A stretch of DNA of 64,000 bases from Mytilus californianus. Its lineage: Eukaryota. The stretch covers positions 47,306,001 through 47,370,000 of the forward strand of contig NW_026262745.1 of assembly GCF_021869535.1 (NCBI RefSeq), read 5' to 3'. A model generated the notes under the pieces. The model worked only from the letters and a program-made list of their open reading frames with translations. It did not search any database and had not been told where the DNA came from. Position 1 is the stretch's first letter; every line of letters starts with the position of its first letter. The translations under genes were made by a program, and so were the position numbers. Shown here in pieces: positions 7,992-50,700 of the stretch.

Positions 7992-10599
7992 CGGTAAATG
8001 CTGTAACAATAGACATGTTGACGATTTAATCGGGCATGCTTGATACAAACCTTAGTCGTCAATAATATCGACTACATGTTCTCCAAACAATCCTAGAAAC
8101 ATATTAAATATTCATGTGGAAAAGCGTAAATTTGAAGATTGACAATTTCAACGACTAACATTTTCACTTTATTATGTTAGTGAAGTCATTAAATTGAAGT
8201 AGTACTTTACATTTTATATCTTGATGTGATTTCATCAGCTACATTACGCAGAAATAATGATTATTGAGTATTAATGGAAAAATAATCCATAACATTTTTT
8301 TAAAGTTTCAACACATGAAAATTAAGGTATTTACGCTTTTCTTTAAATTTTAAACATGCATATTTATGAGGCACATACCTGGATTGTCTAGAAAACCAAC
8401 AAATTGGTCTGAAAACATGAAGATTAATGAAGTTTTAGCTTTTGTACCAACTGATTAGAAATGGAAACGTATACGTCCTCTGTAACATACAATCTAACAA
8501 CTCTAGGAACATCGTAGAGGCAGACAAACATTGCAGTAAAACTGAACCCGAATAAGCTATTTGTTATATTTTAAAAAATCAATCGCTTCATTAATTCCTC
8601 GGAAAGAGTAACCCGAATAGTTATTGTTAAGATAACTACAGTATGATTATTTTGGCGTTCTGAGATTAAAAATAGCCGCTATTGATAAGCAATACTTAAA
8701 ATCAGACATTGTATTAAAAAATGTACAAAGGAAGGGCTACTAAATTATATATGTATAACAATAGATTATACGAATATTCATATTAAAACTAAAAAAGCGT
8801 TTATATATTTCGTGCCGATTTGAAATTCAAAAAACGGACTTCGGCAACGGGTTCTGATTTATTTCTTCCTAGAAGTATATTATTCTGTTAAATATATACA
8901 ATTAAAAATTACTCTAAAATATACAATTCTAATCATTTTCAGTATTTATCATTATAATGTTATAAACAATTCGTATTTAAAAAAAAACAACGCTTAACAC
9001 CCAAAAAGTCACTGAAAGATAGATTTTGTGTTAGTTTTTCAACTTAAAAATGACATAGAAATATATATATATACGAAAAGTGTAAGTGAAATACAGAACT
9101 CAAATTTTTTTTTTATAAATAGATAATATATGAATATATAGGTATTTATAACCATATCCCACTTATATAAAAGAAAGTCTTTGAAAAATGTGTTGCACAT
9201 GCACATTTGAATTTAATGCTTTTCATATTTGAAAAAAATAAATCTATTAGGTTAGATAAGCAAACGAACTTGAATATGATTCCATAATAAACCACACAAT
9301 CTTAGTCAGAACCCTTATCAGCATAAATTATGTTTACAATTTTCGCATCATAATGAATATGTAAGTAAGCTTATTTTCAACTTAATCTGACTACAACTAC
9401 ATTGTTAACAAATGGTTACCTAGTTTAAACCATTTGGAACATTTAACCTGATACGAAAGAACGGGCGCAAGGACGCACAGAATGGAAACAATATACCCCT
9501 GCTATTATCAAATTGAGAATGGAAATGGGGAATGTGTCAAAGAGACAACAACCCGACCAAAGAGCAGAAAACAGCCGAAGGCCACCAATGGGTCTTCAAC
9601 ACAGCGATTAAATCCCGCACCCAGAGGCGGGATTCAGCTGGCCCCTAAACAAAAATGTGTACTAGTTCAGTGAAAATCGACGTCATACTTAACTCCAAAA
9701 CATATAAATGCACTAAAATTAAAAATCATACAAGACTAACGAAGGTCAGAGGCTCCTGAATTGGGACAGGCGCAAACATGCGGCGGGGTTAATAGATATA
9801 AGAAGATGTGGTATGAGTGCCAATGAGACAACCCTCCATCCAAGTCAAAATTTATAAAAGTAAACCATTATAGGTCAAAGTACGGTCTTCAACATGGAGC
9901 CTTGGCTCAATCCGAACAGCAAGCTATAAAGGGCCCAAAAATTACTAGTTTAAAACCATTCAAACTGGAAAACCAATGGTCTAATCTATATAAAAAACGA
10001 GAAACACTTATGAACCACATCAACAAACGACAACTACTGAACATCAGATTCCTGACTTAGGACAGGTGCAAACAATTGCAGCGGGTTTAAACGTTTTAAT
10101 GGTACCAAAGCTTTAGCCTTATCTGAAACAATAGTGTAACATCACAACATAGAAAAACACACTATAAAATATCAATTGAAATGGCTTAACTCAATCAAAA
10201 GACATATTAACACCGGTGAACATACACTGAACAAATAAATTTTATCTATGATACAATGCAAATACAAAATAAATAAACTAAGGGAAGAATAATTAAAGTA
10301 ACATGTTATACCGCTGTGAAATGTTAAACAATTTAAGAAAAACAATATACTTGAACAAAAATATCAGCCACTTCCATTACTATAAACACAGGTTTATAAA
10401 AATAATTTTGTTGTTAGGTATACGTGTACAGTTCAGTTAGAGAAAGGAAATATTTTTACAAAATAAATAATTTTGATGTTCATTGTACGAAGAAGAGAAA
10501 ATTTATAGTAATCCCAAACACTTATCAAAGCTGGTATATAGACCAGATATAACCCTGAATAACATTAAATAACAAAAAAGCATTACAATTAGTATCAAC

Positions 10600-11095
10600 A
10601 GGTCATAAACAAGAAAGTACGATTTGAGAGTACTCGCAGTTACTGACAGCTAGTTAAAAACCAAAAACAATTAATAATAAAAAATCATGCATCAGAGACT
10701 AAAATCGACTAAAACACATCCCAGGGATTTATTATTTTAACGTCATGGACAATCAAAGAAGACATGACTTGTGCAATGCCAAAAAATAAATATGTATTGA
10801 CAGGCAGTAGGCTAGATAGGAGTTAACCTCTTTATAGATCAAAATGAACGTGGGTGTGTCTTTATACATCCCGTTTGAAAAGAATAAAAATTTAGTTATG
10901 TTTTAATTCGCTGATGACAAAATCGATACTAGTGCCAATGTAAACTATATTCAAAGATCTAATTACAACATTGGTAAGATAACCTTTACTAATAAGTTTG
11001 TTTAAAGGTTCGATTAGTTTACATGGATCACATAGTGATTTCCGCGCTATGACCGTAAAATTTAGGATGTGAAATACCATTTTTAATCAGTTTTC
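10600..11095 (-). mobile_element. Naiad-type PLE 3' fragment (RT C-terminus plus 3' UTR)
   Basis: ORF 10892-11080 (KLIEPLNKLISKGY..VIRSLNIVYIGTSIDFVISELKHN) aligns with the C-terminus of the RT ending at 23464; the downstream sequence resembles 23520-23700. Confidence 0.8.
10692..10762 (-). promoter_or_regulatory. SECIS element (type II) in PLE 3' UTR
   Basis: On the minus strand: ATGA (10746-10743), 12 nt, then AAA; helix II GTTAAAATA/TGTTTTAGT; mini-stem ATCC/GGAT; 3' CGAT quartet strand; helix I GATTG/TAGTC. Confidence 0.7.
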
Positions 11096-11706
11096 TACAG
11101 GTACAGCCAAATTTACAAATCAAATCTTTGTATCTATGAAAGAATTTAGTAAATGTTAAACATGTTTAGTGAGATCTCAACCCTCCCCCTATACCTCTAG
11201 CCAATGCAGAAAAAACCAACACACAGCAATACGCACAGTAAAACTAAGTTAAAAAGAAATCTGAGTCCGATGTCAGAATAGGTAACAAAAAGAAACTAAG
11301 CAAAATGACAATGATATACTGGTAATACATACTATGTAGATGTCCGAGAGAAATTTAGACTTCAATTTAATTCAAAATAGAACAGTCTAAGTATTTAATG
11401 CATCTTTTCTGTAATTTTAATGGGTTAAAACGGACACAAGATAGCCTGCTGAATACATTTTATCTGGATAAAGAAAAAGATGTCATTTGAATACTGACCA
11501 GCCTAGACAGAACTCCCAACATCTAACCATATAAAACATGTGCCAATTAAAGTTAGTGTAGAACAAAGTAACATAATTGGTGTTTGTTGATTTGATTTTT
11601 AAACCTTGCAATTTTATTTTATTCGTGATCTCAACTTACCGACAACATAAACAGCAAAAAAAATACTTAATCTGAAATAAATTAACAAAATAAACAATAC
11701 ATGTAT

Positions 11707-15030: not shown

Positions 15031-17537
15031 AAGTCTTTCATGCTATGAATCGATGCATCACCTACCATGACAACATGTCGCTATAGTGAGTATAAGAATG
15101 TTTATATCTTTATTGATCCATTGCTTATAGTTTCCAGTTTGTTCATGCGCCCAAATCCATGTTCTCTTCTCAAGCTTAAAATGTTCGAGTTATTTCTTTT
15201 CATAAATATGTCCCGTTTTCCAAACAATATTTAACCTAGTACAAAGTACTGCACAGTGTAATAGTTTACTTAATGTACTTCTACTACAAGGCCATTCCAA
15301 AATAGGGCACCATTTTCTACATAAGGACATGCCTGTACCAAGTCAGGAATATGAAAGTTGTTTTCCATACGTTTGATGTGTTTGAGCTCTTGATTTTGCC
15401 ATTTGATAAGGGACTTTCCGTTTTCAATTTTCTTTGGAGTTCGGTATTTTTGTTATTTTACTTTTTACGTATGAAGTAAGAAACAAAATTATAAGATTAT
15501 GGAAAAGAAAACATAAAGTGTATTTATTCATGAGACAAAAATCCTATTAGTACTTGACGAAACGCAAAAGCAAAGAAAAATCTTTTTGACATTGTTTATC
15601 ATCACAAAGTCACCGTAAGGCGTTGCTCACACCTCAAAGTCGATGTCACATTGTGCAACAAGTTCACGATAGGACCATGTACTGGTTAGGGACATAATTT
15701 GACGTCGATACGCTTCTTGGGCATTGATAGGGGCAATAGGGGGTAGGATACCAAGGGGACACTCAAAACTCGTAGGCCGAAGACGCATGTCAGGCCTTTT
15801 ATAACTATGCGGTATGGGTATTGGTCATTGTTGAAAGCCATACGGTGACCTATTGTTACTAACTTCTACGTCATTTGATTTCAAATGGAGAGTTGTTTCA
15901 TTGGCAATATTATCATACCACATCTTATTTTTATAACGTAATGGCAACAATCCAAATTGTGCTCGATGGTAGACATGCAGATTTATATACTAGTACTGAA
16001 TTTAGATACTGTTGTATAAATCACTACACACATGGCAACATACATGTGTCCGAAACACTGAAAACTTATACAACAGAGTGATATTTTAAAATGTAATATA
16101 TATACATATATTATCTGGTTATACATTTAAACACCAATGCAATATTTATAGACATGTTTAATACATGTGATTATTTAACAACCTGTGTATGTGGCCGACT
16201 AAAAAAAATCAATTGTCAGGTGACTGGCAAGTACATGTAACACGTACTACTAATCCCTTTTTTTGCTTTTGGTGTAATTGTAAACATCCAAATATGATAA
16301 GTTTTAAACAATGCATTTTTTGTATCGTTATTCATAGTTTATCAAAAAAACGCAATATCATATGAAAATCGTCATACATATAAACATAATTATAGAATAC
16401 ATACAATGCATGATGCTTTTTCATCTACCTAACTGATATCGAATTCATGCCATTCTCATTAGCACCAGAAAAGAGTTTGGTAAATAATTACAGTGTAAAA
16501 TTCATCAAATATAAATTACCTGTCATGATGGTAAGACCTAATTCACTTCCTCATACCTTATACGTAGAAAATGGTTATTTATAGAAAATCGGGTGTACTA
16601 TTTTCGGAAGTCACAACATTTTGTATTATATTTAAAGATTCTCAAGCTATATCATGTATATACAGAAATAAAACTTGTTACATCAGTTTTTGTTTCATAT
16701 TCACCGTATGAAGAACTGCATTAGGCTGATTCAAAGCCGGCGGACAGATATTTGCCTCGAATTTTGTACCATCAAACATGTATCCATTTACAGTAAGATA
16801 CTTGTTTGATAGTAGAAAAAGTGGGACAAGTGTGTGTGGTCAACACTTCATTACAGATAACACGCATTGTAATAACACTTTAATAAAGCCCAATGAGTGG
16901 AACCTAGTCACTGTCTGTGAATGCTAGTTAGACCTTTCTTGTGCCACTGAGATCCCATCGCTTATGCGTTGGCTTACCCCGACATTGTCCGTACGATGGA
17001 CGTGAAGCATGGCTAAACACATAATCTGTCCTCGGTCATTGTTGACCTGAAACGTGTCCATGAAAAAACGGCACACGGGAAATCAAAGCTGTAATTAAGT
17101 CAGTCTACATGGTCTATGAGTTTTAAAGTAAAACATATCTATAAAGGTGAGACAATTTAACAAATTAATATGTTATATAGATATATCTCTATAGAATCTT
17201 TTAATTTCATCGGGGACGTGTATTTTTCATATTGTTTACGTAAACAATATTCAATTTTTGCGCTTAGATGAACAGCGAGACTGACCAATTATTCTATTTA
17301 TAATTTCAAATACTTTGACTAAGATGTTTCAAATATCAAGGACATCCAACAGATTCGTTGTTTTGGAAGAACTTGCACAGACCGACGGACTAAGTTAAGT
17401 TGACACTTCGGTATTCTCGCTCTTCTTTATTCTATCATGATTGAAATAGGTATCATTAATCATACCATTTAATTTACGATGGCCATTTCATCATAAGATA
17501 TAAAATGACAGTATCGTTGACATCTAATTTCGCCAGT

Positions 17538-20450: not shown

Positions 20451-21367
20451 AAGACAACGGCGGGAGGCGGTAAAGAAACAGTCGGAAAATACTCACGTGT
20501 GCGTATCATGTTGTTGTGGACAGCTGTTGTCTGGAAACGTGTCGTAGTTTCTGAAAATAAATATTTATAAGCTTAAGTAAAACCACACGCAAGAACATGA
20601 CAAATACCACTAATTAGTTAACGTATAATATCATGTACATAAGAAGTATTTTTTTTTTCATTTTAATTAAAAACAAAATGTTTATTTACACCGTTCATCT
20701 ATTAATGCTTGTTTTTGTCATGATGTTTTTTTTTTCTATTAATTAACAACCTTTCACTGACTCTGAATGTTGTGTACAATATAAAAAGCTTTAATGTTGT
20801 ATAATTTACATTGGACTTTATGTAAAATCGAATGGTAGATTGCATGATTGATAACAATTTTATGGAATGGAACATAATCAACAATGGAAGCTGTTGTTTA
20901 GAAGACACCGATCGCATGTTTATTTTTCGATGAGCATTACTTGAAATCCTTATCATTTTTACTTAAAAAATACCCCGATTTTTTTCCAGAATTTTATAGT
21001 TCATTGATATTGTTTTAAAATCTTTGAGAAAAGGCACCTTGAAACCCTTGTCAGAACAGTCTTAGACCTTTTGTATATTTAAAGACTTACTTGTACCCAG
21101 AATTATACCAAACATCTTTGTATATATATACATTGATATTTATGCGTTGTTATCATTTCATATTTGTTTATTTATTTGAAGGAGTAGCAAATCCCTTTGA
21201 CTCCAAATGTTCATTCAAGAGCCTATGATTCAGTGGTTATCTTTGGTGCATGACTGTCTACCTTATATGTGTTTCGTGTGCTGTTTCTTTTTAAATAAAT
21301 CAGGCTGTTGGTTTTCTCGTTTGAATCATTTTACATTTTGCATTTTGTAATGCCAGGAATTTTATTT

Positions 21368-21573
21368 ATAAATAAGAAGATGTGGTATGATTGCCAACGA
21401 GACAACTCTCCACAAGAGACCAAATGACGTAGAAGTAGTCAACTATAGGTCACCGTATGACCTTTAACAATGAGCAAAATTCGTACGGCATAGTAGGCTA
21501 CAAAAGGCTCCGAAATGCAAAATGTAAAACAATTCAAACGAGAAACACAACGGTCTGATTCATGTACAGAAAT
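21368..21573 (+). repeat. Highly abundant dispersed ~200-bp repeat (AAGAAGATGTGGTATGATTGCC family)
   Basis: Related copies seen at ~5886, ~9793, ~13436 (-), ~15789 (-), ~23893 (-), ~32019 (-), ~48917 (-), ~53935 and ~57937. Confidence 0.85.
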
Positions 21574-22419
21574 AATCAGATCGATACAAAGCACAAACAC
21601 AACTAACAAAAAAACACATCAGACACAAAGTATACAAATCTGAGTGTACGCGCAATTACTGATAGCAACTTATAAATTCATACATCTAAGACTAAAATTA
21701 TATCAACCAGTACACTTCCAATTTGAAAACTGGAAAGTGGCGTATCATTTGACACTAGAATCGAAGTCTACTCTTTAACAAATGATCTTGAAAGGGTCCC
21801 TACATTTCGAAGAGCATACTACTCCTTTAACACGAGACAATCAATAACTGACGGGTTGTGTATATGTATTTGATAAATCCCACACAATCGCAAAGGCTTC
21901 ATGTGTGAATTTTGGGATTATAGTTCATACCCTTTTGGTCTAATTTCTATACTCCGGGTAACAATCGCGGAAAATCTTGATTAAATACAATAACTTACGA
22001 CTTCACTGTTTCTTCTTCTTTGAGTTTTTGATATTTACTGAAATCACATAGAAAAGAAAAAATAAGATCCAAATACGTTATTCGATGCCATTTGACCACG
22101 GGAGATTTGATTACATATTTGGAATACCTGCCTTCACATTCAGACTAATGCTTGTACTTAATCTGACTTACACGCTGCCTATAAATACAGTGTTGTTTTG
22201 TTGTTTTTATTTTATTTCTAACAGCTATAACGAAACTGGTAGATACAATTGATAACCTTATGCATTCAATTCCATCAGTTCTGGCAATGTATATATCCAG
22301 TACAATGTATATGAAACGAAAGGAAAAAATTGAAACTGTGCACAACATATGCAAAACGTGTACAGATTGGAAAGGAAACAAATCTTTTACGGAGATTTGT
22401 ATTGATACATGTGTAGTGG

Positions 22420-23464
22420 TTACATTTAATGTGTTGTCATATTTGCAACCATACTTCCACACAATCTTATCAAACAAAAGTTTTTCTATTTAATTAAATT
22501 GTCGTTTGGTAAATCTCCATGCAAATATATTTGCTGCAACGCATTTAAGGCCTTCTCTAATGAAAAAGGTAAATATGCTAGATATACTAACTGGAGGTGT
22601 GCCGAGATGATTGAAGCTGTTAATTTTCTCCTTGATAATATTTGTGATCGTTTCGGCAATAAAGTTTATCGACAGGTTGTATGCATTCCTATGGGCACCA
22701 ATTGCGCCCCTTTAATAGCAGACTTGTTCTTGTACTGTTATGAATCACAGTTTATGACCAAACTTAGCAAAGAAAAATTGCATTTAATTGATAAATTCGA
22801 CAACACTTACCGTTATCTTGATGATATTTTTTCGTTAAATAATCAAGAATTTTCTAAATATACTGCCGAAATTTACCCAAAGGAACTGACTTTGAATAAA
22901 TCAAACATAAACGGTAATAACTGAGCTTTCCTAGATTTAGATATTTCTGTTGTACACGGGAAACTCTACACTAACATTTACGACAAAAGGAACGATTTTT
23001 CGTTCCCTATTGTTAATTTTCCATTTTTGGACGGTGATGTTCCTTTGGCACCATCTTACGGTGTTTATATATCACAACTCGTTCGCTTTGCCCGTGTCTG
23101 CTGTGACGTTTTGGATTTCAATGAACGCAATCTACGTACTACTGGTAAATTATTAAGTCAGGGATTTTGTAAACACAAATTATTTAAACCCTTTACTAAA
23201 TTCTTCTATAGATATAAAGATTTGGTTTAAAAGTTTGGTTGTACCTGTAGAAAACTTATTTAAAACGGGATAGCACATCCAAATTTTTACGGAGATGTTA
23301 TTTACCGAGCCCGGCCATTTAGATACGATACGGGTAAACTTATCGATCCTTTAAATAAACTTATTCTAAAAGGTTACCAATTCAACTCTATAATTAGATC
23401 TTTGAATATTGTCTTTATTGGTATTAATATTGATTTTGTTGTCAGTAAATTAAAATCAAACTAA
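22420..23464 (+). pseudogene. Naiad-type Penelope-like reverse transcriptase, 5'-truncated, with in-frame TGA (candidate Sec) at 22922-22924
   Basis: TILPHNLIKQK; insertion-in-fingers-like ICCNAFKAFSNEK; IPMGTNCAPLIADLFLY; RYLDD; FLDL; YDKRNDF; PSYGVYISQLVRFAR. The ORF ends KLKSN* with no C-terminal GIY-YIG, and two TAA stops show decay. Confidence 0.85.
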
Positions 23465-23548
23465 ACATTATATTTATATACATATGCACATCCATTGCTC
23501 TACAAACTGTCGTTACCTTTATCTTGGCATTGCACACGGTCATGTTTT

Positions 23549-23625
23549 TCTGTGACTGTTAATGACATCTTTACACTAAATCCATTGGATGTTGGATGTG
23601 TACTGATTGAAAATTTAGTCTTAGA
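23549..23625 (+). promoter_or_regulatory. SECIS element (type II) in PLE 3' UTR
   Basis: Helix I TCTGTGACTG/TAGTCTTAGA; ATGA 23562-23565; helix II ATCTTTACAC/GTGTACTGAT; unpaired AA 23578-23579; mini-stem ATCCA/TGGAT; 3' TGAA 23608-23611. Confidence 0.75.
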
Positions 23626-25902
23626 TGCATGATTTGTTTATTAGTTATTATTGGCTTTGAACTAGCTTTCAGTAACTGCGAGTACCCTCAGATCTGTAAT
23701 TAGTGTCTTTTTGTTGTGGGGATGTATAAGTACCCTGCCACGTCCACTCTGTGTTTTTGTTAAATGTATTTCTGCTTTGTATCATTCTGATGAGTTAAGC
23801 TAGTTTCAACTAATTCTTATAGTTTGTTCTTATGTTGTACTGTTACACCACTGTCCCAGGTTAAGGAGAGGGTTGGCGCCTTCAAACTAGTTTAATCAGG
23901 CCGTTGGTTTTTTCGTTTGAATTGTTTTACATTTGTCATTTCAGGGCATTTTATAGCTGATTATGCGGTATGGGTTTACTCATTGATGAAGGCCGTACGG
24001 TGACCTATAGTTGTTAATTTCTGTATCATTTGGTCTCTTGTGGAGAGGTGTCTCATTGACAATCATACCACATCTTCTTATTTTTATATAGCAATCTAAA
24101 CCACAATTAAGTCAAAGAATTGCATTATTGAGTGCAAGCAAGAAAGTCCCCTAGATACAACACATATAATAACACTTTTGAAAACCTTTACATATGCATT
24201 GCTGTTATGTACAATTAACCTTTTTCTTGCCCTGAAAGAAACAACAAACTAGTATTAATACCGCACTATATACATTGGAATAACTTTTGAATACATGTCG
24301 TTTGTAAGGGCTATTTACATTTTCGTATTTTTCCTCTGAAAAATCTCAGAAAACCCAATCTGCAACAGTCAAATAAACAATTGACGTCTTGAAGTATAAA
24401 CTAGATACAATACTATTATAATTTCTGAAGTGTAATTATGTGTACAATTTATATTTATCAGAACTTCTTCTTCTTAACTGTACTATAAAGTGCCAACATT
24501 GTGCTTAAATTTTATTTCTTTTTTAATCGATACAAGAATATTCATGTTTTATTGCAGATATCAAATGTTAAATATTCTGGTTTGTGTTTTGATATTATTA
24601 AAAAATTATTAAGTGCAATCGATAGAAGAATATTCATGTTTAAAATAACCTGATTCAGATATAAATGCTTTTGATTTTTGAGAACCCATTAACATGTCTA
24701 GCAAGATTTGAATGAATGAACTAATTCTTTATTTGCAAACCAGTAGTTACATGCTATAGCAACACAAACATAATTATTTACGCAAGATTTACGATCCTTA
24801 GAAAAAAGAACTCAATGCATGCATTAATATAAACTGTTTTCGCCTTTGTATAGGTTCTAAGTTTCAAGTTTGATTTAACTTCAAGATCCCGTCCACAAAG
24901 GCCCCTGGAGTATGTGAACAGTCAATATTCGCTTTTTTTCAATTATTTTTACTTCAGAATACTTTTGTTTACTTTGCTCATGTTAGATATGCACAAATTT
25001 ACAACTTTAGTGTGATTATAAGTTAGTTTAATTTACAAACAAGCAAGGAGTGAAAACACCATAATGTTTACATACCTCCATTTCGCTTTAATTTTCTCTA
25101 TTAGTGGTCTAAAAATAGAATGATAAAATAATTATAGAATAGATCTTAACACTTCTATGAACAAAAAGAGAAGAAATAACTAAATCTGAAAAATTTATTG
25201 AAAATAAAATTTTATAATCAACAAGACTAATAGTATCCGCTGGATATGTTTATTACTGTAGAATAATACTATTATTGTTAATGATTATGTACAAACATGC
25301 GATTGGTTTACGTATAAGATAACGTCAGATTTATTCAATAATTCTAATATGACGACCTATTATCGACAACCAGTATAATCACAATATATCTACCTTTAGC
25401 GCAAACGCAGTAATACACATAAACGGCTGTTCCGCGTTACGACCAACTTATTTATACTGCCAGATATTCTCAATTTTCGACATCAAAATCCCCAGTTTAC
25501 GAAGGCCAAGCTTCAGATACAATATATTTATCTCTATTCTACAGCAAAATAAACAAATCAGTCCATTTCAATTTATTTTTCATGGTAAAATTTCGCGAAA
25601 TGATGTTATTGTCTTGACATGGCAACAAAACAAGGTGACGTCACAAATATGTTTCCGTAAACAAAAAATCAAATGTAAATACCGGGCATTTTAAAGCTTC
25701 TTGTACGCCTCAGAAAGAATAAAATTACATTGGAAGAAAATTTATAAGTGAAAAATGCGATTAAAAAAAAATAATCATTGAATTATATAATATTACTAAT
25801 ATTATCAAAATTGGGCAAAACGGAACAGCCAAAACAGTATCGTACATGTATGTATAGGGCTTTCACGGTTAACAAAATTACCGAATTTATCCTATTAGAT
25901 TC

Positions 25903-26063
25903 GAAATAATTCATGGCAGCCGTAGATTTGATTTCTTTAACCATGGGTTGGGCATTTATATTCGTATTTTACCCCTCGCTAACGCTCAGGGTAAAATAAT
26001 CGAATATAAATGCCCAACCCATGGTTAAATGAAAACAAATCTACGGCTGCCATGAATTATTTC
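25903..26063. mobile_element. Palindromic MITE
   Basis: ~72-bp arms GAAATAATTCATGGCAGCCGTAGATTTG...CAAATCTACGGCTGCCATGAATTATTTC. Confidence 0.75.
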
Positions 26064-28483
26064 TTAATTATATGTTATACAAAATCTTGTAGGTCTCATG
26101 TATCTTTGTAGGTAATTTTTTTTTTTTTAGCTTTTGATTAATGATGTTTTCAAACATACAGATACGAACTATCCGTGTTTTTAAAACTCTTTGAACGATG
26201 ACTTAAGCCATAAAAACGTAAAAAAAAAGTATGCTTGAACAGAAAATGACGTTGCTACCGTAAAATGTTATTTTTCACGACGTCAAACTGTGACATGTCG
26301 GGAAAAGATGCATTTTAGACAGATTTTTTTCATTCAAACTTATTTAACTTAAAAACGATATCATGAACCCCACTTTTTGAAAATGACATTTGGCTTGATT
26401 ATGCATGAAGATTATTTGTGCTAATATATTTGAAAAATTACCGATGATATGTTTTTTAAATTAGATAAATATACAGCAAAAAATACGGTTATTTGACTAA
26501 AATCATGACAATGTGACAAAAATGAATAATTTCCAAGGAACTGTTACATAAAATCAAAGCACACGTATGTAGAGAAGATACTCCAGATGCTTTTACAAAA
26601 TTCCGCTTGCAGTTATCTTTTGAAACGAAAAAGTTAAGTATGTCTTTTCAAAGGGTAGAAATGTCCAAGAAACCGAAATTTCCAGTAAATGTCTGAAATT
26701 TCTACCCCGTTTATTTCTAAAAGTAGCACATGAAGGTAAATTTTTTTATTACATATTTGAATCGACTAGGTGCAAAATAGCTTGCATGCAAACTTTCGTC
26801 AAAAATTCACCCTGGGATCAAAACTGTATCGTATAATCGATTCCTCTTGACTCTCTCTCCGACTGTTAGGCTCGTGCTTTTGGCTGTTCCGGATGAATAT
26901 GTTAACACGTCTTATCGGAATGAATAATTCAATATGCTTTGCAAATTTTAGGGGCGGAAAGGGGGGGGGGGGGGGGGCACGCCCGTTACGCCCCCGCCTG
27001 AATCCGCCCCTGGCGGCATATAGTCATTGATAGTAGTTATGCAGTAGTAGTAGTATCAGATACATGTATACCATGACATATTTTCTACGAGATGTTAAGT
27101 AAACAATAACTACTTTGTTCAATTTGAAACTTTTGAGAAAAATAATTTCAACCAATTTCATAACGCTAGACATAATAGAAGTTAAATAATTTTATGTAGA
27201 TCGTTTTTATTATTTGTTTAAAGCTTTAAGCCTTGCTAGGTGACGAAACCAAAAAAACTTACCTCAAACAACAACATGGAATAATGATAACTGAAAATAT
27301 CAACAAACTTTATGAAAATAAACACATACAAAACTCTGCGTGTGTGTGTTTATGTAATATCTTATGACCTTTTTTATCTATCGCTTATGAAATTAGATGT
27401 TTTAAAGAGAAAGGAGTATGTTCGATTATAAAGTGCAATGTTACAAGATAAAAAATGTTTTAAATTGACTTAAAGACATTTGAGAAAGTCAAATAGACCT
27501 ATTTGTGTCAAAGTTTTATTGCGTCGACAAACTAAATATTCAAGTTAAAACATGTGAAATGTCATTACAAACATCATTTTAAAAAATCTTTTTATTCGAC
27601 GTATGCGCTCTATGTTTCCTGACCAATAATCAATGGAAATTAACACATTTTCATTGATTTTTCCGTGAAAAATCAAAATGAGTACTAATTGTGACGTCAC
27701 GAATAAAACGCATGTACGTAAATTTTCAACAAAAAGGCTTATTTCCTATCTAGTCACTGTATTAGCTATGATTCATTGTGATATTGGTCAATAAATCCTA
27801 CTTTGAAATTTAAGCTAAAAAACGTGGCCATTTCAGGGCTTTATAGAACATACTCCTTTAATAGCATCTGTGAAATGCATTTGCAATTTTTTCTTGGCAC
27901 CGGACAGTTTAAAGCTCAATAAAACCGCACATGTATGTTACTCTTAATATGTAATTTTTTTCTGTCATTAGAATTTGTTGATAGTACATAGTCGTAAACC
28001 ACCACACATCCCATTCATACGGTAACGAAAACTGTATTTTACGTTAAACTTTCTTCATATTTTTATATATTCATTCCAACTTTTTCGCATACACAACCAA
28101 TTTTGTAACACAATATGAACAGAAACAAACATAAATTTTGAACATTATTTGAATACAAAATGAAACCAAATAGAATTAATACATACACAGAAACATCGTC
28201 TAAGGTAGTTATTACACTGTAGCATTGAATTAATTTAAAGTTAAAGGAAGTTATATATAACGTCTACTTCCTTAATTTATCACTTCCTTATTCAACAAAT
28301 CAATAGACCTTTTCAATAAGTTTAGAGGTGAAATAGATGGGTCGTATCAAAAATAAAAAAAATAATTCAAGAATGACTCCGTATTCCAAAAAAAAACTAT
28401 TAAAATGTGAATACTAAGTATTCCCTTAATCTGGATAATTTTATGATCGAACAGAAGGTTCTATGTTTTAATACGAAATAGAA

Positions 28484-28723
28484 TTGATTCATTGGTGTTT
28501 AACGTCACTTTCAGCACTACATTGTTTTATTTGGCGGTAAGTTTTTATTGGTGGAGAAAGCCGGAGTCCCCTGAGAGAACCACCGACCATCGGTAGGAAA
28601 TCCTAGTCAATTACAATTGGAGTCGGGCGCACCTGCCACGTACATGATTCGAACTTTCAACCTAGGTGTTGACAGGGTAGTGATACAGTAGTCCGACTAC
28701 TTAGACCACTCGGTTACCGAGGC
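28484..28723 (-). mobile_element. tRNA-derived SINE with a V-domain-like core
   Basis: Minus-strand head GCCTCGGTAACCGAGTGGTCTAAG (A-box-like) and AGTTCGAATC (B-box-like); core GGTTCTCTCAGGGGACTCCGGCTTTCTCCACC. Duplicate at 36527-36766, fragment at ~61234-61349. Confidence 0.6.
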
Positions 28724-30545: not shown

Positions 30546-31588
30546 TTACATTTAATGTGTTGTCATATTTGCAACCATACTTCCACACAATCTTATCAAA
30601 CAAAAGTTTTTCTATTTAATTAAATTGTCGTTTGGTAAATCTCCATGCAAATATATTTGCTGCAACGCATTTAAGGCCTTCTCTAATGAAAAAGGTAAAT
30701 ATGCTAGATATACTAACTGGAGGTGTGCCGAGATGATTGAAGCTGTTAATTTTCTCCTTGATAATATTTGTGATCGTTTCGGCAATAAAGTTTATCGACA
30801 GGTTGTATGCATTCCTATGGGCACCAATTGCGCCCCTTTAATAGCAGACTTGTTCTTGTACTGTTATGAATCACAGTTTATGACCAAACTTAGCAAAGAA
30901 AAATTGCATTTAATTGATAAATTCGACAACACTTACCGTTATCTTGATGATATTTTTTCGTTAAATAATCAAGAATTTTCTAAATATACTGCCGAAATTT
31001 ACCCAAAGGAACTGACTTTGAATAAATCAAACATAAACGGTAATAACTGAGCTTTCCTAGATTTAGATATTTCTGTTGTACACGGGAAACTCTACACTAA
31101 CATTTACGACAAAAGGAACGATTTTTCGTTCCCTATTGTTAATTTTTCATTTTTGGACGGTGATGTTCCTGTGGCACCATCTTACGGTGTTTATATATCA
31201 CAACTCGTTCGCTATGCCCGTGTCTGCTGTGGTTTTGGATTTCAATGAACGCAATCTACGTACTACTGGTAAATAATTAAGTCAGGGATTTTGTTAACAC
31301 AAATTATTTAAACCCTTTACTAAATTCTTCTATAGATATAAAGATTTGGTTTGGAAGTTTGGTTGTACCTGTAGAAAACTTATTTAAAACGGGATAGCAC
31401 ATCCAAATTTTTACGGAGATGTTATTTACCGAGCCCGGCCATTCGGATACGATACGGGTAAACTTATCGATCCTTTAAATAAACTTATTCTAAAAGGTTA
31501 CCAATTCAACTCTATAATTAGATCTTTGAATATTATCTTTATTGGTATTAATATTGATTTTGTTGTCAGTAAATTGAAATCAAACTAA
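30546..31588 (+). pseudogene. Duplicate Naiad-type PLE RT with the same in-frame TGA (31048-31050)
   Basis: Same motifs as 22420-23464. Has TGG where copy 1 has TAA (DLVW), but carries its own frameshift near 31230. Confidence 0.85.
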
Positions 31589-31674
31589 ACATTATATTTA
31601 TATATATATATGCACATCTATTGCTCTACAAACTGTCGTTACCTTTATCTTGGCATTGTACACGGTCATGTTTT

Positions 31675-31751
31675 TCTGTGACTGTTAATGACATCTTTAC
31701 ACTAAATCCATTGGATGTTGGATGTGTACTGATTGAAAATTTAGTCTTAGA
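31675..31751 (+). promoter_or_regulatory. SECIS element, duplicate copy
   Basis: Sequence identical to 23549-23625; ATGA at 31688. Confidence 0.75.
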
Positions 31752-34700
31752 TGCATGATTTTTTTATTAGTTATTATTGGCTTTGAACTAGCTTTCAGTA
31801 ACTGCGAGTACTCTCAGATCTGTAATTAGTGTCTTTTTGTTGTGGGAATGTATAAGTACCCTGCCACGTCCACTCTGTGTTTTTGTTAAATGTATTTCTG
31901 CTTTGTATCATTCTGATGAGTTAAGCTAGTTTCAACTAATTCTTATAGTTTGTTCTTATGTTGTACTGTTACACCACTGTCCCAGGTTAAGGAGAGGGTT
32001 GGCGCCTTCAAACTAGTTTAATCAGGCCGTTGGTTTTTTCGTTTGAATTGTTTTACATTTTTCATTTCAGGGCATTTTATAGCTGATTATGCGGTATGGG
32101 TTTACTCATTGATGAAGGCCGAACGGTGACCTATAGTTGTTAATTTCTGTATCATTTGGTCTCTTGTGGAGAGGTGTCTCATTGACAATCATACCACATC
32201 TTCTTATTTTTATATAGCAATCTAAACCACAATTAAGTCAAAGAATTGCATTATTGAGTGCAAGCAAGAAAGTCCCCTAGATACAACACATATAATAACA
32301 CTTTTGAAAACCTTTACATATTCATTGCTGTTACGAGAGCTATGTACAATTTACCCTTTTCTTGCCCTGAAAGAAACAACAAACTAGTATTAGTACCGCA
32401 TTATATACATTGGAATAACTTTTGAATACATTTCGTTTGTAAGAGCTATTAACATTTTCGTATTTTTCCTTTTGAAAAATCCCAGAAAACCCAATCTGCA
32501 ACAGTCAAATAAACAATTGACGTCTTCAAGTATAAACTAGATACAATACTATTATAATTTCTGAAGTGTAATTATGTGTACAATTTATATTTATCAGAAT
32601 TTCTTCTCTTTAACTGTACAATAAAGTGCCAACATTGTGCTTAAATTTTATTTCTTTTTTAATCGATACAAGAATATTCATGTTTTATTGCAGATATCAA
32701 ATGTTAAATATTCTGGTTTGTGTTTTGATATTATTAAAAAATTATTAAGTGCAATCGATAGAAGAAAATTCATGTTTAAAATAACCTGATTCAGATATAA
32801 ATGCTTTTGATTTTTGAGAACCCAACATGTCTAGCAAGATTTGAATGAATGAACTAATTCTTTATTTGCAAACCAGTAGTTACATGCTATAGCAACACAA
32901 ACATAATTATTTACGCAAGATTTACGATCCTTAGAAAAAAGAACTCAATGCATGCATTAATATAAACTGTTTTCGCCTTTGTATAGGTTCTAAGTTTCAA
33001 GTTTGATTTAACTTCAAGATCCCGTCCACAAAGGCCCCTGGAGTATGTGAACAGTCAATATTCGCTTTTTTTCAATTATTTTTACTTCAGAATACTTTTG
33101 TTTACTTTGCTCATTTTAGATATGAACGAACTGTTTACAACTTTAGTGTGATTATAAGTTAGTTTAATTTACAAACAAGCAAGGAGTGAAAACACCATAA
33201 TGTTTACATACCTCCATTTCGCTTTAATTTTCTCTATTAGTGGTCTAAAAATAGAATGATAAAATAATTATAGAATAGATCTTAACACTTCTATGAACAA
33301 AAAGAGAAGAAATAACTAAATCTGAAAAATTTATTGAAAATAAAATTTTATAATCAACAAGACTAATGGTATCCGCTGGATATGTTTATTACTGTAGAAT
33401 AATACTATTATTGTTAATGATTATGTACAAACATGCGATTGGTTTACATATAAGATAACGTCAGATTTATTCAATAATTCTAATATGACGACCTATTATC
33501 GACAACCAGTATAATCACAATATATCTACCTTTAGCGCAAACGCAGTAATACACATAAACGGCTGTTCCGCGTTACGACCAACTTATTTATACTGCCAGA
33601 TATTCTCAATTTTCGACATCAAAATCCCCAGTTTACAAAGGCCAAGCTTCAGATACAATATATTTATCTCTATTCTACAGCAAAATAAACAAATCAGTCC
33701 ATTTCAATTTATTTTGCATGGTAAAATTTCATTAAACGAAAATTCCGCGAAATGATGTTATTGTCTTGACATGGCAACGAAACAAGGTGACGTCACAAAT
33801 ATGTTTCCGTAAACAAAAAATCAAATGTAAATATCGGGCGTTTTAAAGCTTCTTGTACGCCTCAGAAAGAATAAAATTACATTGGAAGAAAATTTATAAG
33901 TGAAAAATGCGATTAAAAAAAAATAATCATTGAATTATATAATATTACTAATATTATCAAAACTGGGCAAAACGGAACAGCCAAAACAGTATCGTATGTA
34001 TAGGGCTTTCACGGTTAACAAAATTACCGAATTTTTTCTATTAGCTAACGCTCAGGGTAAAATAATCGAATATAAATGCCCAACCCATGGTTAAATGAAA
34101 ACAAATCTACGGCTGCCATGAATTATTTCTTAATCATGTTAATTATACGTTATACAAAATCTTGTAGGTCTCATGTTTCTTTGTAGGTAATTTAATTTTT
34201 TTTTTCGTTTTTGATTAATGATGTTTTCAAACATACAGATACGAACTATCCGTGTTTTTAAAACTCTTTGAACGATGACTTAAGCCAGGAAAACATAAAA
34301 AAAAAGTATGCATGAACAGAAAATGACGTTGCTACCGTAAAATGTTATTTTTCACGACGTCAAACTGTGACATGTGGGGAAAAGATGCATTTTGGACAGA
34401 TTTTTTTCATTCAAACTTATTTAACTTAAAAACGATATCATGAACCCCTCTTTTTGAAAATGACATTTGGCTTGATTATGCATGAAGATTATTTGTGCCA
34501 ATTTTTTTGAAAAATTACCGATGATATGTTTTTTAAATTAAATAAATATACAGCAAAAAATACGGTTATTTGACTAAAATCATGAAAATGTGACAAAAAT
34601 GAATAATTTCCAAGGAACTGTTACATAAATTCAAAGCCCACTTATGTAGAGAAGATACTCCAGATGCTTTTACAAAATTCCGCTTGCGGTTATCTTTTGA

Positions 34701-47283: not shown

Positions 47284-47725
47284 CTAAGACGTGGTAAAAA
47301 TGTCATTAGTTAGTTTAGACACAGACACATCGTATAGATCAACCAATTCGTGATGGTGTCCATAAAATTTCCGGAGTGTCATTTTTAATCTTTCCTCCTT
47401 ATTACTCTGTTGGAGCAGTTTCTGCGTAAGGAGCACACTCCTGTATATGAAGTCAGTATAGTGTGAACATGCACGAGCATAACGTATCAATTGAAATATG
47501 TACACACCATACGGCAGAGCAGATGGTATGTTACTGCAGAAAAATGGGAAATTGATATTTGGGAAGTTGAAACCATCCCGTTTGTCATAGACTTTAGTGT
47601 GAAGTCGTCAATCTGTGTAAATATTGAGGAAAAGATCAAGGTATGAAGCAGTCCTTCTAGTATCAGTAGTATCCTTAATTTTAAGTTCACTGGGATATAT
47701 GAGATGCAAGTACTGACTGAAATAT
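47284..47725 (-). pseudogene. Second Naiad-type PLE RT C-terminal fragment (different family)
   Basis: IYPSELKIKDTTDTRRTASYLDL...KVYDKRDGFNF..INFPF..SNIP...YGVYIFQLIRYARAC...KFYGHHHEL; one internal TGA at a Gly-like position. Confidence 0.8.
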
Positions 47726-50700
47726 GGGTTTAACTCCATCATATAGTCATGTGTACCTGTGCCAAGTCAGGAACCTTGTCAGTTGTTGTCTCGTGTCACA
47801 TCAATAAAATTGAGCGGAAGATACCAAAGGAAATATCCAAACTCATGAGTCGAAGAGATACCTATAAAACAATATTGTAACCGGAAAATAAAGGCTAAAG
47901 AACGAACTTCAGTCTGTAAAACACTATTACGCTGAGCAACACGGATTCCATAAATAACCGGGGTGTTCCGGTAGAGTAAACATATCCGTTTCAAATGTAG
48001 CACCTAACTGCTTTTTTTATTTGAGAATTTTGGTGTTGATGACAGATATTTGATAGTCTCTGCTTGTTATCTTTTAAGTTACATCTTTTTCTCGACTAGA
48101 TGCGATTTAGAGCGCAGTATAGAAATATGGTCACCTGGATTTTTCCTGTACGACTGTTAAACCCATACTACATTGTAAATTGAAGCAGGGCATCCGTTTG
48201 GCTGTGTGGAATGTATAAGTACTCAGCAATGTCTACTAGGAAAGATGACTGTAAACCAGATGCCAGGTAACGGGAGCGTGCCATGCACTCTGTACGTTAA
48301 AGAACCCCCTTAACACAACTGTTTGAGGGTTTAGCAAATGGTCTGCTACAAGGCAAATTTGCTATCCCTTCTGACATATCCTCAGTTCTAGCGATAGACT
48401 AAATTTCTCGTCCACATTTTGGTTATCTAACATTCCAGAACCTGATTATTATCTTTTTTTGTAAATTTGGACGAACTTTTTGCTAGTAGACGTTAAGCAA
48501 ACAATAATCAACCATCACCTTTTTTAGTGGTACCAGTTTAACCACAGGGAACATGTAAGCTGAAAGTTCATGAATTAAATAAGTATACGTCCATTGTTCT
48601 TGTCATCCTGTCTTTGGCTGTTTGTGGTGACACAGTTGGGAGATGAAAGGAAATAAAAAGCCAGTATAACAAGCGACATAAAAGCTAATATTTCTATACA
48701 GTATGTCATGCCGACAGACAATTTCTCCAAAACCTTTCAATTATGTTCATGGTCATAGAGAGGCGGAAGATAAGGGATATTGAAACTCATAAGTCGAAAA
48801 CAAACTGACAATGCATTTTAATGCACCTGTCTTAAGCCAGGAACCTGTTGTTCCAGTGGTTATCGTTTGTTGGTGTGGTTCATAAGTGTTTCTCGTTTAT
48901 CGTTTTTATATAGATTAGACCGTTGGTTTTCCTGTTTGAATTGTTTTACACTTAGTCTAGTCTTTTTGGGGCCCTTTATAGCTTGCTGTTCGGTGTGAGC
49001 CAAGGCTCCGTGTTGAAGGCCGTACTTTGACCTATAATTGTTTACTTTTTACAAATTGTGACTTGGATGGAGAGTTATAACATTGGCACTCATACCACAT
49101 CTTCTTATTTATATTGACAATGCCATGGCAAAAAACGAAAAACGATCAAAAGACAAACATCAGTCTATAAAGTACAACATAGAACACCAAAGACTGAGCA
49201 GCATGAACTCCACTGAAACAATGGACGTCGGAAGATTAAGAACAGGATAATCATTTAGAATATTTAATAAATAAGCTAAGTCTTCGACAGTCTGAACGGT
49301 AACAGCTGCAGAATATCAAAGCTATAATTAAATCGAAAATTAATCAATTCTGATACAAATTAATTTTCTTTTCATTCGTTTTCCACAGGATGAGATGACT
49401 ATTATAACAGATTAAGAATTTATATACGAGCCGCAGATGGACATCAGTAAATTCTGATTACATCGTGTTAGATAAGATATTAAAGGGTCTGATTGGGGGT
49501 CCTTCATTTCTTCTTCTTATTTAATTTTTAAGACCATTTTTCTCCATTCTTTATATTTGAGCACTCCATTATTCTCTATTCTCTATTTTTTGCCTACTTT
49601 TCTCTATTCTCCATTTGTTTTGCCATTTATTCTGAACTTTTTGCACATTATTCTCTTTTTTGTAAACCCCATCCATAACCTCATACATGTATAAAGATTG
49701 TAATAAAAAATGTCATTTTTTTTTCGTTTTTTAAATATATAGAAACATTAATTTGAGTTTTGATATTTGGATGTTAGGTAATGTATTAACTGAGTTTTCT
49801 ACAGATATCCTGGTTTTGATTACATATTATGGTGTGAATTAATTAGCATGCATCGAAAGTGTAACAGATCGAATTGTTGTTACAGTTTTGAGTTACTCTT
49901 CGTCATATTTAATGGGCAACCTACATTTGCGCGAATTTGAATTTTGACAAGTAGAACGTATGTGCGAACAACCGCGAATTTACTTGTGTTTTTTAACCTG
50001 AACTTTACGAAAATGTTGTTAAAATTTATCATATTGATAAATACATAATTCGATGGTTTATATAAGCATGTAAAAGTAAAGTCTTGGAAAAAATAATTTT
50101 TTTTTCTAGGATATTTACACGATTGTGCTCATTTTATTTATTTAAAAAAAAAGTCTTAATCTATATTTTGTTTCCAAGAACTCATTATATCAAGGATTGT
50201 ATAGTAACTTTTTTAATCCTTGATAATATTTGTAAAAAAAATATTTTTTAATAGCCACTTTAACTAATCCGCGCAAATGTAATAGTTTATCAACAGGTAA
50301 ATTTCGCGCAAACGTAATGCGCTGTATTTAATATGACAACCATGTTGTTTATTCAGAATACATTTTACGAAGAAAAAACTTAGAAACGGAGTACTTATTC
50401 TTTTAAAAGCGATATAAGCTACGATTTGGACAGTACAAGTAGAACAAATCAAAGTTTTTTTTTTTGTTTTTTTTTTTTTTTCAAACATTTCTATTAGCTT
50501 ATAGTCAGTTTGGTTCGATTTTGAATAAAGACAAATATGATTCGACCTTACTTTGAGTTATATATTGCACATGAGCTCAGCATATTCAGTAATGGAAAAG
50601 AAGATCAGTTAAAAAGTGAAACTATGGAGGATTGCATGAAGACTTCGCTCAATCATACAGGTTAAACATGTTAAACGATGATTCACATTGGCTTTTTTTA

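What the first reader, a model, noticed from the sequence alone, without database searches (positions are those of the whole stretch)
22420..23625. Candidate selenocysteine-encoding retrotransposon: Naiad-type RT with in-frame UGA and a 3' UTR SECIS
Seen: the RT reads ...NKSNINGNN-TGA-AFLDLDIS... with the frame continuing cleanly after the TGA (22922-22924), which sits immediately before RT motif E. The equivalent residue in the second Naiad fragment at 47.6 kb is Ala (TA-SYLDL). About 85 nt after the ORF stop is a complete type II SECIS: helix I (9/10 pairs), ATGA...TGAA non-Watson-Crick core, 10-bp helix II, unpaired AA exactly 12 nt after ATGA, and a 5-bp apical mini-stem. Established: eukaryotic UGA recoding needs such a 3' UTR SECIS. 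Selenoprotein-encoding Naiad PLEs have been reported from spiders and clams (Craig et al. 2021). Inference: this mussel-like family uses Sec inside the RT palm/primer-grip region. I do not know whether it has been described in this lineage. This particular copy is dead (5'-truncated, two TAA stops).
Basis: partly seen in the sequence, partly recalled or inferred. Interest (0 to 1): 0.9.

Follow-up and report, generated by a model that had tools for sequence, protein, structure and literature searches.

The report
Dead copy of selenocysteine-coding Naiad retrotransposon

Summary
There is an in-frame TGA at 22922-22924, two TAA stops, and a SECIS-shaped hairpin 87 nt after the ORF stop.

The Sec reading of that TGA fails. 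Genome-wide, only this copy and its twin at 31048 carry TGA there, and the twin arose by an 8.1-kb tandem duplication. About 809 other copies have TGT/TGC. The column is not a conserved Cys in distant Naiads (A/C/I/I).

The family is nevertheless very probably selenoprotein-coding.
- Longer copies carry five in-frame TGAs in the N-terminal part that this copy lacks.
- All five align to invariant Cys of the endonuclease zinc fingers and the CxC motif.
- One of them toggles TGA/TGC/TGT between subfamilies.
- A sister family on metagenome contigs has an open 1001-codon frame. Its only internal stops are five TGAs at such Cys positions.
- Both families keep the hairpin (Rfam SECIS_1 27-30 bits, below the cut-off of 35). 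Helix II changed at 6 of 10 pairs with none broken.
- The host has tRNA-Sec genes.

Sec-coding Naiads were published in 2021 for clams and spiders, so this is a new member with a different Sec set. Earlier notes of this scan report Sec-type Naiads elsewhere in this genome.

The parts
22453..24089 (+). 5'-truncated dead copy of Naiad family A. It has two aligned blocks, 22453-23876 and 23894-24089, with about 130 bp deleted between them relative to longer copies.
   Evidence: blastn against the 4.3-kb copy L031 gives 89% identity. The genome search found 9081 first-look candidates, with the top 40 at 89-91% identity.
22454..23464 (+). Remnant of the C-terminal 336 codons of the RT reading frame (RT motifs B, C and E and the C-terminal tail).
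   Evidence: Translation. Weak Pfam RVT_1 match. tblastn to the L032 RT piece gives 83% identity.
22922..22924 (+). Private TGA. The family has TGT-CCT here and this copy has TGA-GCT. It is not a Sec codon.
   Evidence: 28 of 28 other copies have TGT. An exact TGA pattern matches only 2 places genome-wide, both in this window. The TGY pattern matches 809 places. Distant homologues have A/C/I/I at this column.
23228..23230 (+). Private TAA stop.
   Evidence: The longer copies L031 and L032 read a sense codon here.
23261..23263 (+). Private TAA stop.
   Evidence: The longer copies L031 and L032 read a sense codon here.
23462..23464 (+). The family's true ORF stop (TAA).
23552..23622 (+). SECIS-like hairpin, a slightly decayed copy of the family's element. 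ATGA is at 23562-23565, helix II at 23567-23576 and 23598-23607, AAA at 23578-23580, and TGAA at 23608-23611.
   Evidence: Rfam SECIS_1 scores 21.5 bits here and 27-30 bits in other copies. Fold z = -3.2. Pairing register.
30579..32215 (+). Twin of the same dead copy, carried by an 8.1-kb tandem segmental duplication (22022-30148 and 30148-37832). It has the same TGA at 31048.
   Evidence: Self-blast gives 95-97.6% identity.
10524..11157 (-). 3' fragment of a sister Naiad family (B-like) with its own SECIS-like hairpin at 10697-10754.
   Evidence: 86% identity to metagenome element L040. SECIS_1 scores 24.9 bits and is the only SECIS hit in the whole window at E<=10.
47302..47730 (-). Distant Naiad RT fragment (39% amino-acid identity) with Ala at the 22922 column.
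   Evidence: tblastn and translation.

Best explanation
The locus is a dead, 5'-truncated insertion (22453-24089) of a high-copy Naiad-type Penelope-like retrotransposon, here called family A. This type has an N-terminal GIY-YIG endonuclease, a CxC linker and a C-terminal RT in one ORF. The TGA at 22922 is a post-insertion TC>AG change of the family's TGT-CCT. It was later copied by an 8.1-kb tandem duplication and has nothing to do with selenocysteine. The hairpin at 23552-23622 is a relic of the family's real SECIS. In full-length RNA, that 3'-UTR SECIS is inferred to recruit the host Sec machinery, so that five in-frame UGA codons are read as selenocysteine. These are the 2nd and 3rd Cys of the CX4CxxC finger, the Cys before the GIY-YIG motif, the first Cys of the CCHH finger, and the first Cys of the CxC motif. 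Shown here: the codon tallies, the alignment of the TGAs to Cys, the open frame of the sister family, SECIS conservation with compensatory changes, purifying selection on the RT, and host tRNA-Sec genes. Inferred: actual Sec insertion.
For: The 22922 TGA is private: with the duplication shown.

Five family-wide in-frame TGAs:
- Both 4.3-kb copies share U1-U4.
- U1 is almost always TGA. U2 is a TGA/TGC/TGT mix that follows subfamily (152 hits).
- U3 has 104 hits, U4 120 hits and U5 171 hits. Nearly all are TGA, with only scattered TGG/TAA/CGA decay.
- U5 is TGA in 12 of the 13 distinct held copies that span it; the other, L018, lacks the codon through a 7-bp deletion.

All five align to invariant Cys in 8-9 distant full-length Cys-type Naiad proteins. 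The private stops of the same copy fall on variable non-Cys columns.

Sister family B sits on contigs from four separate ENA metagenome assemblies. On three of them it has 1001 codons from the first ATG to TAA, and the fourth contig ends inside the frame. The only internal stops are five TGAs, at U1, U3, U4, U5 and the Cys 8 residues after DKA. A third family has TGA at U3 and U4.

SECIS evidence:
- It is the only Rfam hit at E<1 in 63 kb of family loci. It always lies on the sense strand 87 nt after the stop and scores 27-30 bits.
- Family B has one 134 nt after its stop, at 28.4 bits.
- Between A and B, 6 of 10 helix II pairs differ: 4 on both sides, 2 wobble-compatible, none broken. AUGA, AAA and GA are invariant.
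- The family A fold has z = -3.4.

Substitutions in the RT frame that are shared between subfamilies are 15 synonymous to 11 non-synonymous. Private ones are 90 to 293 (Fisher p = 3e-4). Subfamily-diagnostic changes next to U2, U3, U4 and U5 are synonymous.

The host has two tRNA-Sec genes at 79.6 and 77 bits, against a cut-off of 47.

Sec-coding Naiads with UGA at these same kinds of Cys are published (PMC8557442).
Against: - No SECIS copy reaches Rfam's gathering score of 35 bits, and SECISearch3 could not be run.
- The covariation rests on two lineages only.
- The family B-like hairpin in the window folds no better than shuffled sequence (z = 0.15).
- No family A copy with an uninterrupted frame was examined. 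Only two held copies span U1-U4, and both have frameshifts or extra stops.
- RNA reads over the element are sparse at the 5' end and come from both strands, so they do not show an element-specific full-length transcript.
- There is no protein-level evidence for Sec.
Confidence: 0.82

Rival explanations
1. One reading: the TGA at 22922 is a genuine Sec codon of this family, placing Sec just before RT motif E.
For: The frame continues after the TGA and a SECIS-like hairpin follows. The family residue is Cys (TGT), one step from TGA. One published clam family has a UGA at a weakly constrained RT6(D) residue.
Against: Genome-wide, TGA occurs only in this copy and its segmental duplicate, against about 809 TGY copies. 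The neighbouring base changed as well (CCT to GCT). The copy has two further stops and no 5' half. The column is A/C/I/I in distant Naiads.
Confidence: 0.02
2. The family's TGAs are real stops and are tolerated. Either the elements were copied in trans by Cys-type Naiads, or only an RT-only protein is made from an internal start after U5. On this view the hairpin is a SECIS look-alike by chance.
For: SECIS_1 scores stay below Rfam's cut-off. Many Cys-type Naiad families share the genome and could supply proteins. All examined family A copies are defective.
Against: Five of five conserved TGAs fall on invariant Cys and nowhere else. Family B keeps a 1001-codon frame open across them. Synonymous subfamily differences flank the TGAs in the endonuclease region. 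U2 swaps between TGA and TGY. The hairpin keeps its cores and compensates helix II changes across families that are 78% identical.
Confidence: 0.08
3. The UGAs are read through, but by near-cognate tRNAs (Cys, Trp or Arg) or another SECIS-independent mechanism rather than as selenocysteine.
For: No direct Sec evidence exists. Multi-UGA processive Sec decoding is demanding.
Against: UGA at Cys positions together with a 3'-UTR AUGA/AA/GA hairpin is the specific signature of eukaryotic Sec genes. The host has tRNA-Sec. Per the paper, bivalves decode selenoprotein P with many UGAs (PMC8557442). Five successive low-efficiency read-throughs would yield almost no full-length protein.
Confidence: 0.05

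Closest known systems
Naiad_Mmer and Naiad_Scon, the selenoprotein-coding Naiads of the clams Mercenaria mercenaria and Sinonovacula constricta (Craig et al. 2021, PMC8557442)
   Same: Bivalve host and N-terminal GIY-YIG Naiad architecture. There are several in-frame UGAs at conserved Cys, including the Cys before GIY-YIG and the first Cys of CCHH (U3 and U4 here). Sister family B also has the UGA 8 residues after DKA. A SECIS lies in the 3' UTR.
   Different: Family A has five UGAs where the clam families have three or four. It adds the 2nd and 3rd Cys of CX4CxxC and the first Cys of the CxC motif, which the main text of the paper does not list. It keeps Cys (TGC) at DKA+8. The hairpin has an apical mini-stem (type II-like) and lies 87-134 nt after the stop. 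The paper reports type I elements 1-21 nt after the stop in three of the four families, overlapping the stop in Naiad_Mmer. Sequence relatedness to the clam families could not be tested because no sequences were held.
Naiad_Smim and Naiad_Sdum, the selenoprotein-coding Naiads of Stegodyphus spiders (same paper)
   Same: UGAs in the CX2-5CxxC finger and before GIY-YIG, several Sec per protein, and a 3' SECIS.
   Different: The spiders use the 1st, or the 1st and 2nd, Cys of that finger, whereas here it is the 2nd and 3rd. Spider Naiads lack the IFD. The host phylum differs.
Cys-type Naiads of bivalves (for example mussel and oyster families in the same paper, and the full-length proteins P0062, P0080, P0099 and P0146 found here)
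   Same: Same domain order and motifs: CX2-5CxxC, GIY-YIG/CCHH, a KR-rich linker, CxC, GPKY/F, DKA and RT.
   Different: They have Cys codons where family A has TGA. No SECIS was examined for them.
Selenoprotein P of bivalves (many UGAs decoded processively; cited in PMC8557442)
   Same: Multi-UGA decoding in the same kind of host shows that the machinery can handle several Sec per mRNA.
   Different: It is a host gene and not a mobile element, and its protein is unrelated.

Membership tests
Naiad clade of Penelope-like elements | An N-terminal GIY-YIG endonuclease and a C-terminal RT in one ORF | tested here: met
   The translated 5' part of L032 aligns across the GIY-YIG region of full-length homologues. 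Pfam scores three of the four homologues tested as GIY-YIG above its cut-off near their N-termini (P0080 falls just below), and P0062 also gives a weak C-terminal RVT_1 match. Family B has both domains in one 1001-codon frame.
Naiad clade of Penelope-like elements | A CxC motif between EN and RT, followed by the GxKF/Y motif | tested here: met
   U-N-C aligns to the invariant C-x-C of 8 homologues, and KKGPKYR follows.
Naiad clade of Penelope-like elements | A DKA motif in place of the DKG of other PLEs | tested here: met
   PADKAANN is present in 8 of 9 held copies that span it (L031 reads DKT), in family B and in the homologues.
Naiad clade of Penelope-like elements | The CX2-5CxxC and CCHH zinc-finger-like motifs of the endonuclease | tested here: met
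   C-x4-U-xx-U and YLVT-U-x4-C align to the Cys columns of the homologues. The downstream His residues were seen but not analysed further.
Naiad clade of Penelope-like elements | An insertion-in-fingers domain between RT3(A) and RT4(B) | not tested
   No alignment against canonical PLEs or TERT was made.
Naiad clade of Penelope-like elements | No canonical hammerhead ribozyme in the element | tested here: met
   No hammerhead hit at E<1 in 15 family A loci or in L040-L044.
Naiad clade of Penelope-like elements | High copy number, frequent 5' truncation and partial inverted or tandem insertions | tested here: met
   Pattern counts were 5189 for the SECIS half, 809 for the RT column and 104-171 for the EN columns. 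DNA depth rises towards the 3' end. An inverted 3'-end piece lies upstream of L031.
Eukaryotic selenoprotein gene (family level) | An in-frame UGA conserved among copies and aligned to Cys in homologues | tested here: met
   Five columns. There is a TGA/TGY swap at U2. Family B has five TGAs as its only internal stops.
Eukaryotic selenoprotein gene (family level) | A SECIS in the 3' UTR that passes a curated model | tested here: inconclusive
   Rfam SECIS_1 scores 27-30 bits in family A and 28.4 bits in family B, against a gathering score of 35. SECISearch3 was not available.
Eukaryotic selenoprotein gene (family level) | The SECIS anatomy: an AUGA...GA quartet, unpaired AA 11-13 nt after it, and helices I and II kept in evolution | tested here: met
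   The cores are invariant in families A, B and B'. AAA lies 12 nt after AUGA. Helix II is kept through 4 double and 2 wobble changes with none broken.
Eukaryotic selenoprotein gene (family level) | The host has the Sec decoding machinery | tested here: met
   Two tRNA-Sec genes score above the Rfam cut-off. SBP2, eEFSec and SPS2 were not searched.
Eukaryotic selenoprotein gene (family level) | Selenium is actually incorporated at the UGA positions | not testable with these tools
   This needs 75Se labelling, mass spectrometry or ribosome profiling.
   2 TGA (one event, later duplicated) against about 809 TGY.

The most novel reading that the evidence does not exclude
At least about 5,000 5'-truncated copies each leave a near-intact SECIS-like hairpin scattered through this genome. 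Some may have landed in 3' UTRs of host genes and supplied the SECIS needed to turn a Cys codon into Sec. The family would then be a generator of new selenoprotein genes in a lineage known for large selenoproteomes. The within-family TGA/TGY toggling at U2, and at DKA+8 between families A and B, would also make it a natural system for watching Sec/Cys exchange.
Probability: 0.1. Interest if true: 0.8.

Novelty: new member of a known kind. Interest (0 to 1): 0.45.

Why it matters
Selenoprotein-coding transposons were first described in 2021 from two clams and two spiders, and the authors asked whether more exist. This family extends them to a mussel-type genome at thousands of copies. It raises the count to five Sec codons per protein, or possibly six across the two sister families. 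It also adds the CxC motif to the list of Sec sites and shows Sec/Cys switching inside one family. In practical terms, gene callers split these elements at every TGA, or translate TGA as Trp, so such families are easily mis-annotated. The case also shows that a single in-frame TGA in a decayed copy is not evidence for Sec. Only a tally across the family's copies tells a Sec codon from decay.

Tried and rejected
I did not try to get round this. I used pattern searches, which print the matched letters.
- Read laying on the 4.3-kb copy showed the 3'-to-5' copy-number gradient and low two-strand RNA coverage. There was a modest sense-strand bias over the RT. It listed nothing at the TGA columns, so it neither supports nor refutes expression of a TGA-bearing full-length RNA.
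- Pfam on the stop-free pieces gave only weak RVT_1 and no GIY-YIG. The domain was established through homologues instead.
- No supplementary files of Craig et al. are held, so I made no direct comparison with the published clam or spider sequences.
- MAFFT put the 3' strand of helix II of family B out of register. I set the register by maximum pairing in a script instead.
- The L031 TGAs at GRHQL* and KKTS* were considered as further Sec sites and rejected. L032 has sense codons there.
- Literature searches for later reports of Sec-coding PLEs or mussel Naiads found nothing beyond the 2021 paper in the held library.
- The host species was not established. Runs holding the element are labelled only as coded organisms or 'mollusc metagenome'.

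Full report
**What is in the window.**
Translation from 22454 gives 336 codons of a reverse-transcriptase C-terminal half. It includes GIPMGTNCAPL, YRYLDD and FLDLDI-type motifs. The frame holds TGA at 22922 and TAA at 23228 and 23261, and it ends at TAA 23462. Pfam sees only a weak RVT_1 match.

Rfam's SECIS_1 model aligns to 23552-23622 at 21.5 bits. The cut-off is 35, and E is 0.19 in an 801-nt search. The minimum-energy fold has the SECIS shape: helix I, an AUGA/UGAA internal loop, helix II, unpaired AA and a 5-bp apical stem. Its z-score is -3.2.

**The TGA at 22922 is private.**
- The stretch belongs to a repeat with 9081 first-look candidates in this 1.65-Gb genome. The 40 scored copies are 89-91% identical, and nearly all start at query base 34, which shows that the window copy is 5'-truncated at 22453.
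- In an alignment of 30 copies, 28 have TGT-CCT at the column. Only the window copy and a 98% identical copy at window 30579-32215 have TGA-GCT.
- Genome-wide, the exact TGA form occurs twice, and both places are in this window. The TGY form with at most one mismatch occurs 809 times.
- The two TGA copies are one event, because they lie in an 8.1-kb tandem segmental duplication (22022-30148 and 30148-37832, 95-97.6% identical).
- In four distant full-length Naiad proteins the column reads A, C, I and I, so it is not a conserved Cys.

**The family does carry conserved in-frame TGAs, but upstream.**
The longest held copies, L031 and L032, share 4.37 kb. In both, the 5' third reads C-NARK-U-QT-U, then SC-DIT-U-KTQS-LIYLVT-U-TKPK-C-GIQYVGQT, where U marks a TGA. 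A fifth TGA sits in PLT-U-N-C. Of the 13 distinct held copies that span it, 12 carry it; in L018 the codon is lost to a 7-bp deletion. I number these U1 to U5.

Pattern searches that print the matched letters gave these tallies:

| Column | Hits | What the listed matches show |
|---|---|---|
| U1 and U2 | 152 | U1 almost always TGA. U2 is a mix of TGA, TGC and TGT that follows subfamily markers. |
| U3 | 104 | Almost all TGA |
| U4 | 120 | Almost all TGA |
| U5 | 171 | Almost all TGA |

At U3-U5 the exceptions are scattered TGG, TAA or CGA, as neutral decay would give. Subfamily-diagnostic changes next to these codons are synonymous: TCT/TCC, ACC/ACT, ACA/ACT and TTA/CTA. The Cys 8 residues after the DKA motif is TGC in all nine held copies. 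Other TGAs in L031 are absent from L032 and are private.

**The TGAs sit on invariant cysteines.**
A profile-free HMMER search with the 204-residue piece between GIY-YIG and CxC found 662 relatives. These include full-length proteins of 915-996 residues. Pfam scores three of those four proteins as GIY-YIG above its cut-off near the N-terminus (P0080 falls just below), and one of them gives a weak RVT_1 match near the C-terminus.

I aligned the L032 translation to them with X at each stop.
- U1-U4 fall on columns that are Cys in 8 of 8 or 8 of 9 homologues.
- U5 falls on the first Cys of the CxC motif in 8 of 8.
- The three private stops of L032 fall on variable non-Cys columns.
- The one homologue with W at U3 and U4 turns out to have TGA there in its DNA. 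It is therefore a third TGA-bearing family.

The CxC, GPKY and DKA motifs, together with the domain order, place the family in the Naiad clade as defined in PMC8557442.

**A sister family has an open frame.**
The best hit, P0001, lies on 3-4.3-kb contigs from four different ENA metagenome assemblies (L040-L043). On three of them one frame runs 1001 codons from the first ATG to TAA; the fourth contig (L043) ends inside the frame. On all four the only internal stops are the same five, all TGA. They lie at U1, U3, U4, U5 and the Cys 8 residues after DKA, while U2 is Cys. I describe this frame only.

This family B is 78% identical to family A at the DNA level. The 3' fragment at window 10524-11157 on the minus strand is 86% identical to it.

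**The hairpin behaves like a SECIS.**
- In 63 kb of family A loci, the only Rfam hits at E<1 are SECIS_1. Each is on the sense strand at the homologous place 87 nt after the stop, at 27-30 bits. This is better than the window copy but still under the cut-off of 35.
- Family B has one 134 nt after its stop, at 28.4 bits.
- The B-like fragment in the window scores 24.9 bits. It is the only SECIS hit in the whole window at E<=10.
- With helix II put in register, family A pairs 9 of 10 positions, family B 10 of 10 and the window copy 8 of 10.
- Between A and B, six of the ten pairs differ: four on both sides, two by wobble-compatible single changes, and none broken.
- AUGA, the following C, UAAA, the 3' GA and helix I are unchanged (partly seen by RNAalifold).

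Two caveats apply. Only two lineages are compared, and the A/U-rich B-like hairpin in the window folds no better than shuffles.

**The ORF was under selection, and the host can decode Sec.**
In the RT frame, substitutions shared by five or more of 28 copies are 15 synonymous to 11 non-synonymous. These shared changes reflect the history of the master lineage. Single-copy changes are 90 to 293 (odds ratio 4.4, p = 3e-4). A protein made from this ORF therefore mattered while the subfamilies diverged, and in a single-ORF element the RT lies downstream of all five TGAs. The genome has two tRNA-Sec genes at 79.6 and 77 bits, against a cut-off of 47.

**Mechanism.**
Shown: the codon tallies, the Cys alignment, the open sister frame, SECIS conservation, selection on the RT and host tRNA-Sec.

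Inferred: on a full-length transcript, the 3'-UTR SECIS recruits SBP2 and eEFSec with Sec-tRNA. UGA at U1-U5 is then decoded as Sec in the zinc-finger-like and CxC motifs of the endonuclease and linker. The window copy lacks that part and is inert.

**Comparison with what is known.**
Craig et al. 2021 (PMC8557442) described four Sec-coding Naiads, two in clams and two in spiders.
- They have three or four UGAs at the pre-GIY-YIG Cys, at DKA+8, and at the CCHH first Cys (clams) or the CX2-5CxxC first or second Cys (spiders).
- They have type I SECIS elements, which lie 1-21 nt after the stop in three of the four families and overlap the stop in Naiad_Mmer.
- Mussel Naiads are mentioned in that paper but are not flagged as Sec-coding.

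Here, U3 and U4 match the clam positions, and family B also matches at DKA+8. U1, U2 and U5 are additional. Family A has Cys at DKA+8, and the hairpin is type II-like and lies further from the stop.

No later paper on this was found in the held library. Earlier notes of this scan report Sec-type Naiads elsewhere in this genome, and one follow-up reached a similar verdict for another family. I treated these as leads only.

**Limits.**
The wider tallies come from 33-35-nt pattern matches.
- RNA reads are sparse at the 5' end and come from both strands.
I did not verify this.

**Verdict.**
The locus is an ordinary dead copy, and its TGA is decay. The family behind it is a credible new member of the published class of selenoprotein-coding Naiads.

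Noticed in passing
window 22022-30148 and 30148-37832: An 8.1-kb tandem segmental duplication at 94-97.6% identity. It carries the dead Naiad copy twice.
   Followed up: partly
window 12427-12469 (-): An Rfam Hammerhead_1 match at 28.9 bits (cut-off 34, E 0.005 for the whole window). It may belong to a canonical Penelope-type element or a retrozyme.
   Followed up: no
window 28869-29836: An internal repeat with a 353-nt offset (self-blast, 96% identity).
   Followed up: no
window 5885-6138, 9792-10193, 13351-13632, 15793-15932, 21215-21572, 48826-49114, 53934-54256, 57931-58046: Many short fragments 72-84% identical to the last 270 nt or so of the element. Either the 3' tail is shared by several Naiad families or it circulates as a SINE-like derivative.
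   Followed up: no
G000:C154:27755505-27807263: About 50 tandem copies, mostly at a 728-bp period, of a tRNA-like sequence. It scores 42.8 bits on the tRNA-Sec model, below the cut-off of 47.
   Followed up: no
L044 (Logan SRR29999175 contig), gene 254-1168: A third Naiad family has TGA at the pre-GIY-YIG Cys and at the CCHH first Cys, with Cys in the CX4CxxC finger. The database protein P0049 shows W at both places, so the gene caller read TGA as Trp.
   Followed up: partly
L031 (reverse complement) 3061-3464: An inverted copy of the element's 3' end lies directly upstream of the 4.3-kb copy. This is the inverted or tandem arrangement typical of Penelope-like elements.
   Followed up: no
window 7463-7597, both strands: A long palindromic hairpin that weakly matches a plant miRNA model (MIR408, 29.8 bits against a cut-off of 64). 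It is probably an inverted-repeat element and not a miRNA.
   Followed up: no
whole genome, pattern: The 5' half of the family A SECIS (35 nt, at most 2 mismatches) occurs 5189 times. SECIS-like hairpins are therefore strewn across the genome by 5'-truncated copies.
   Followed up: partly
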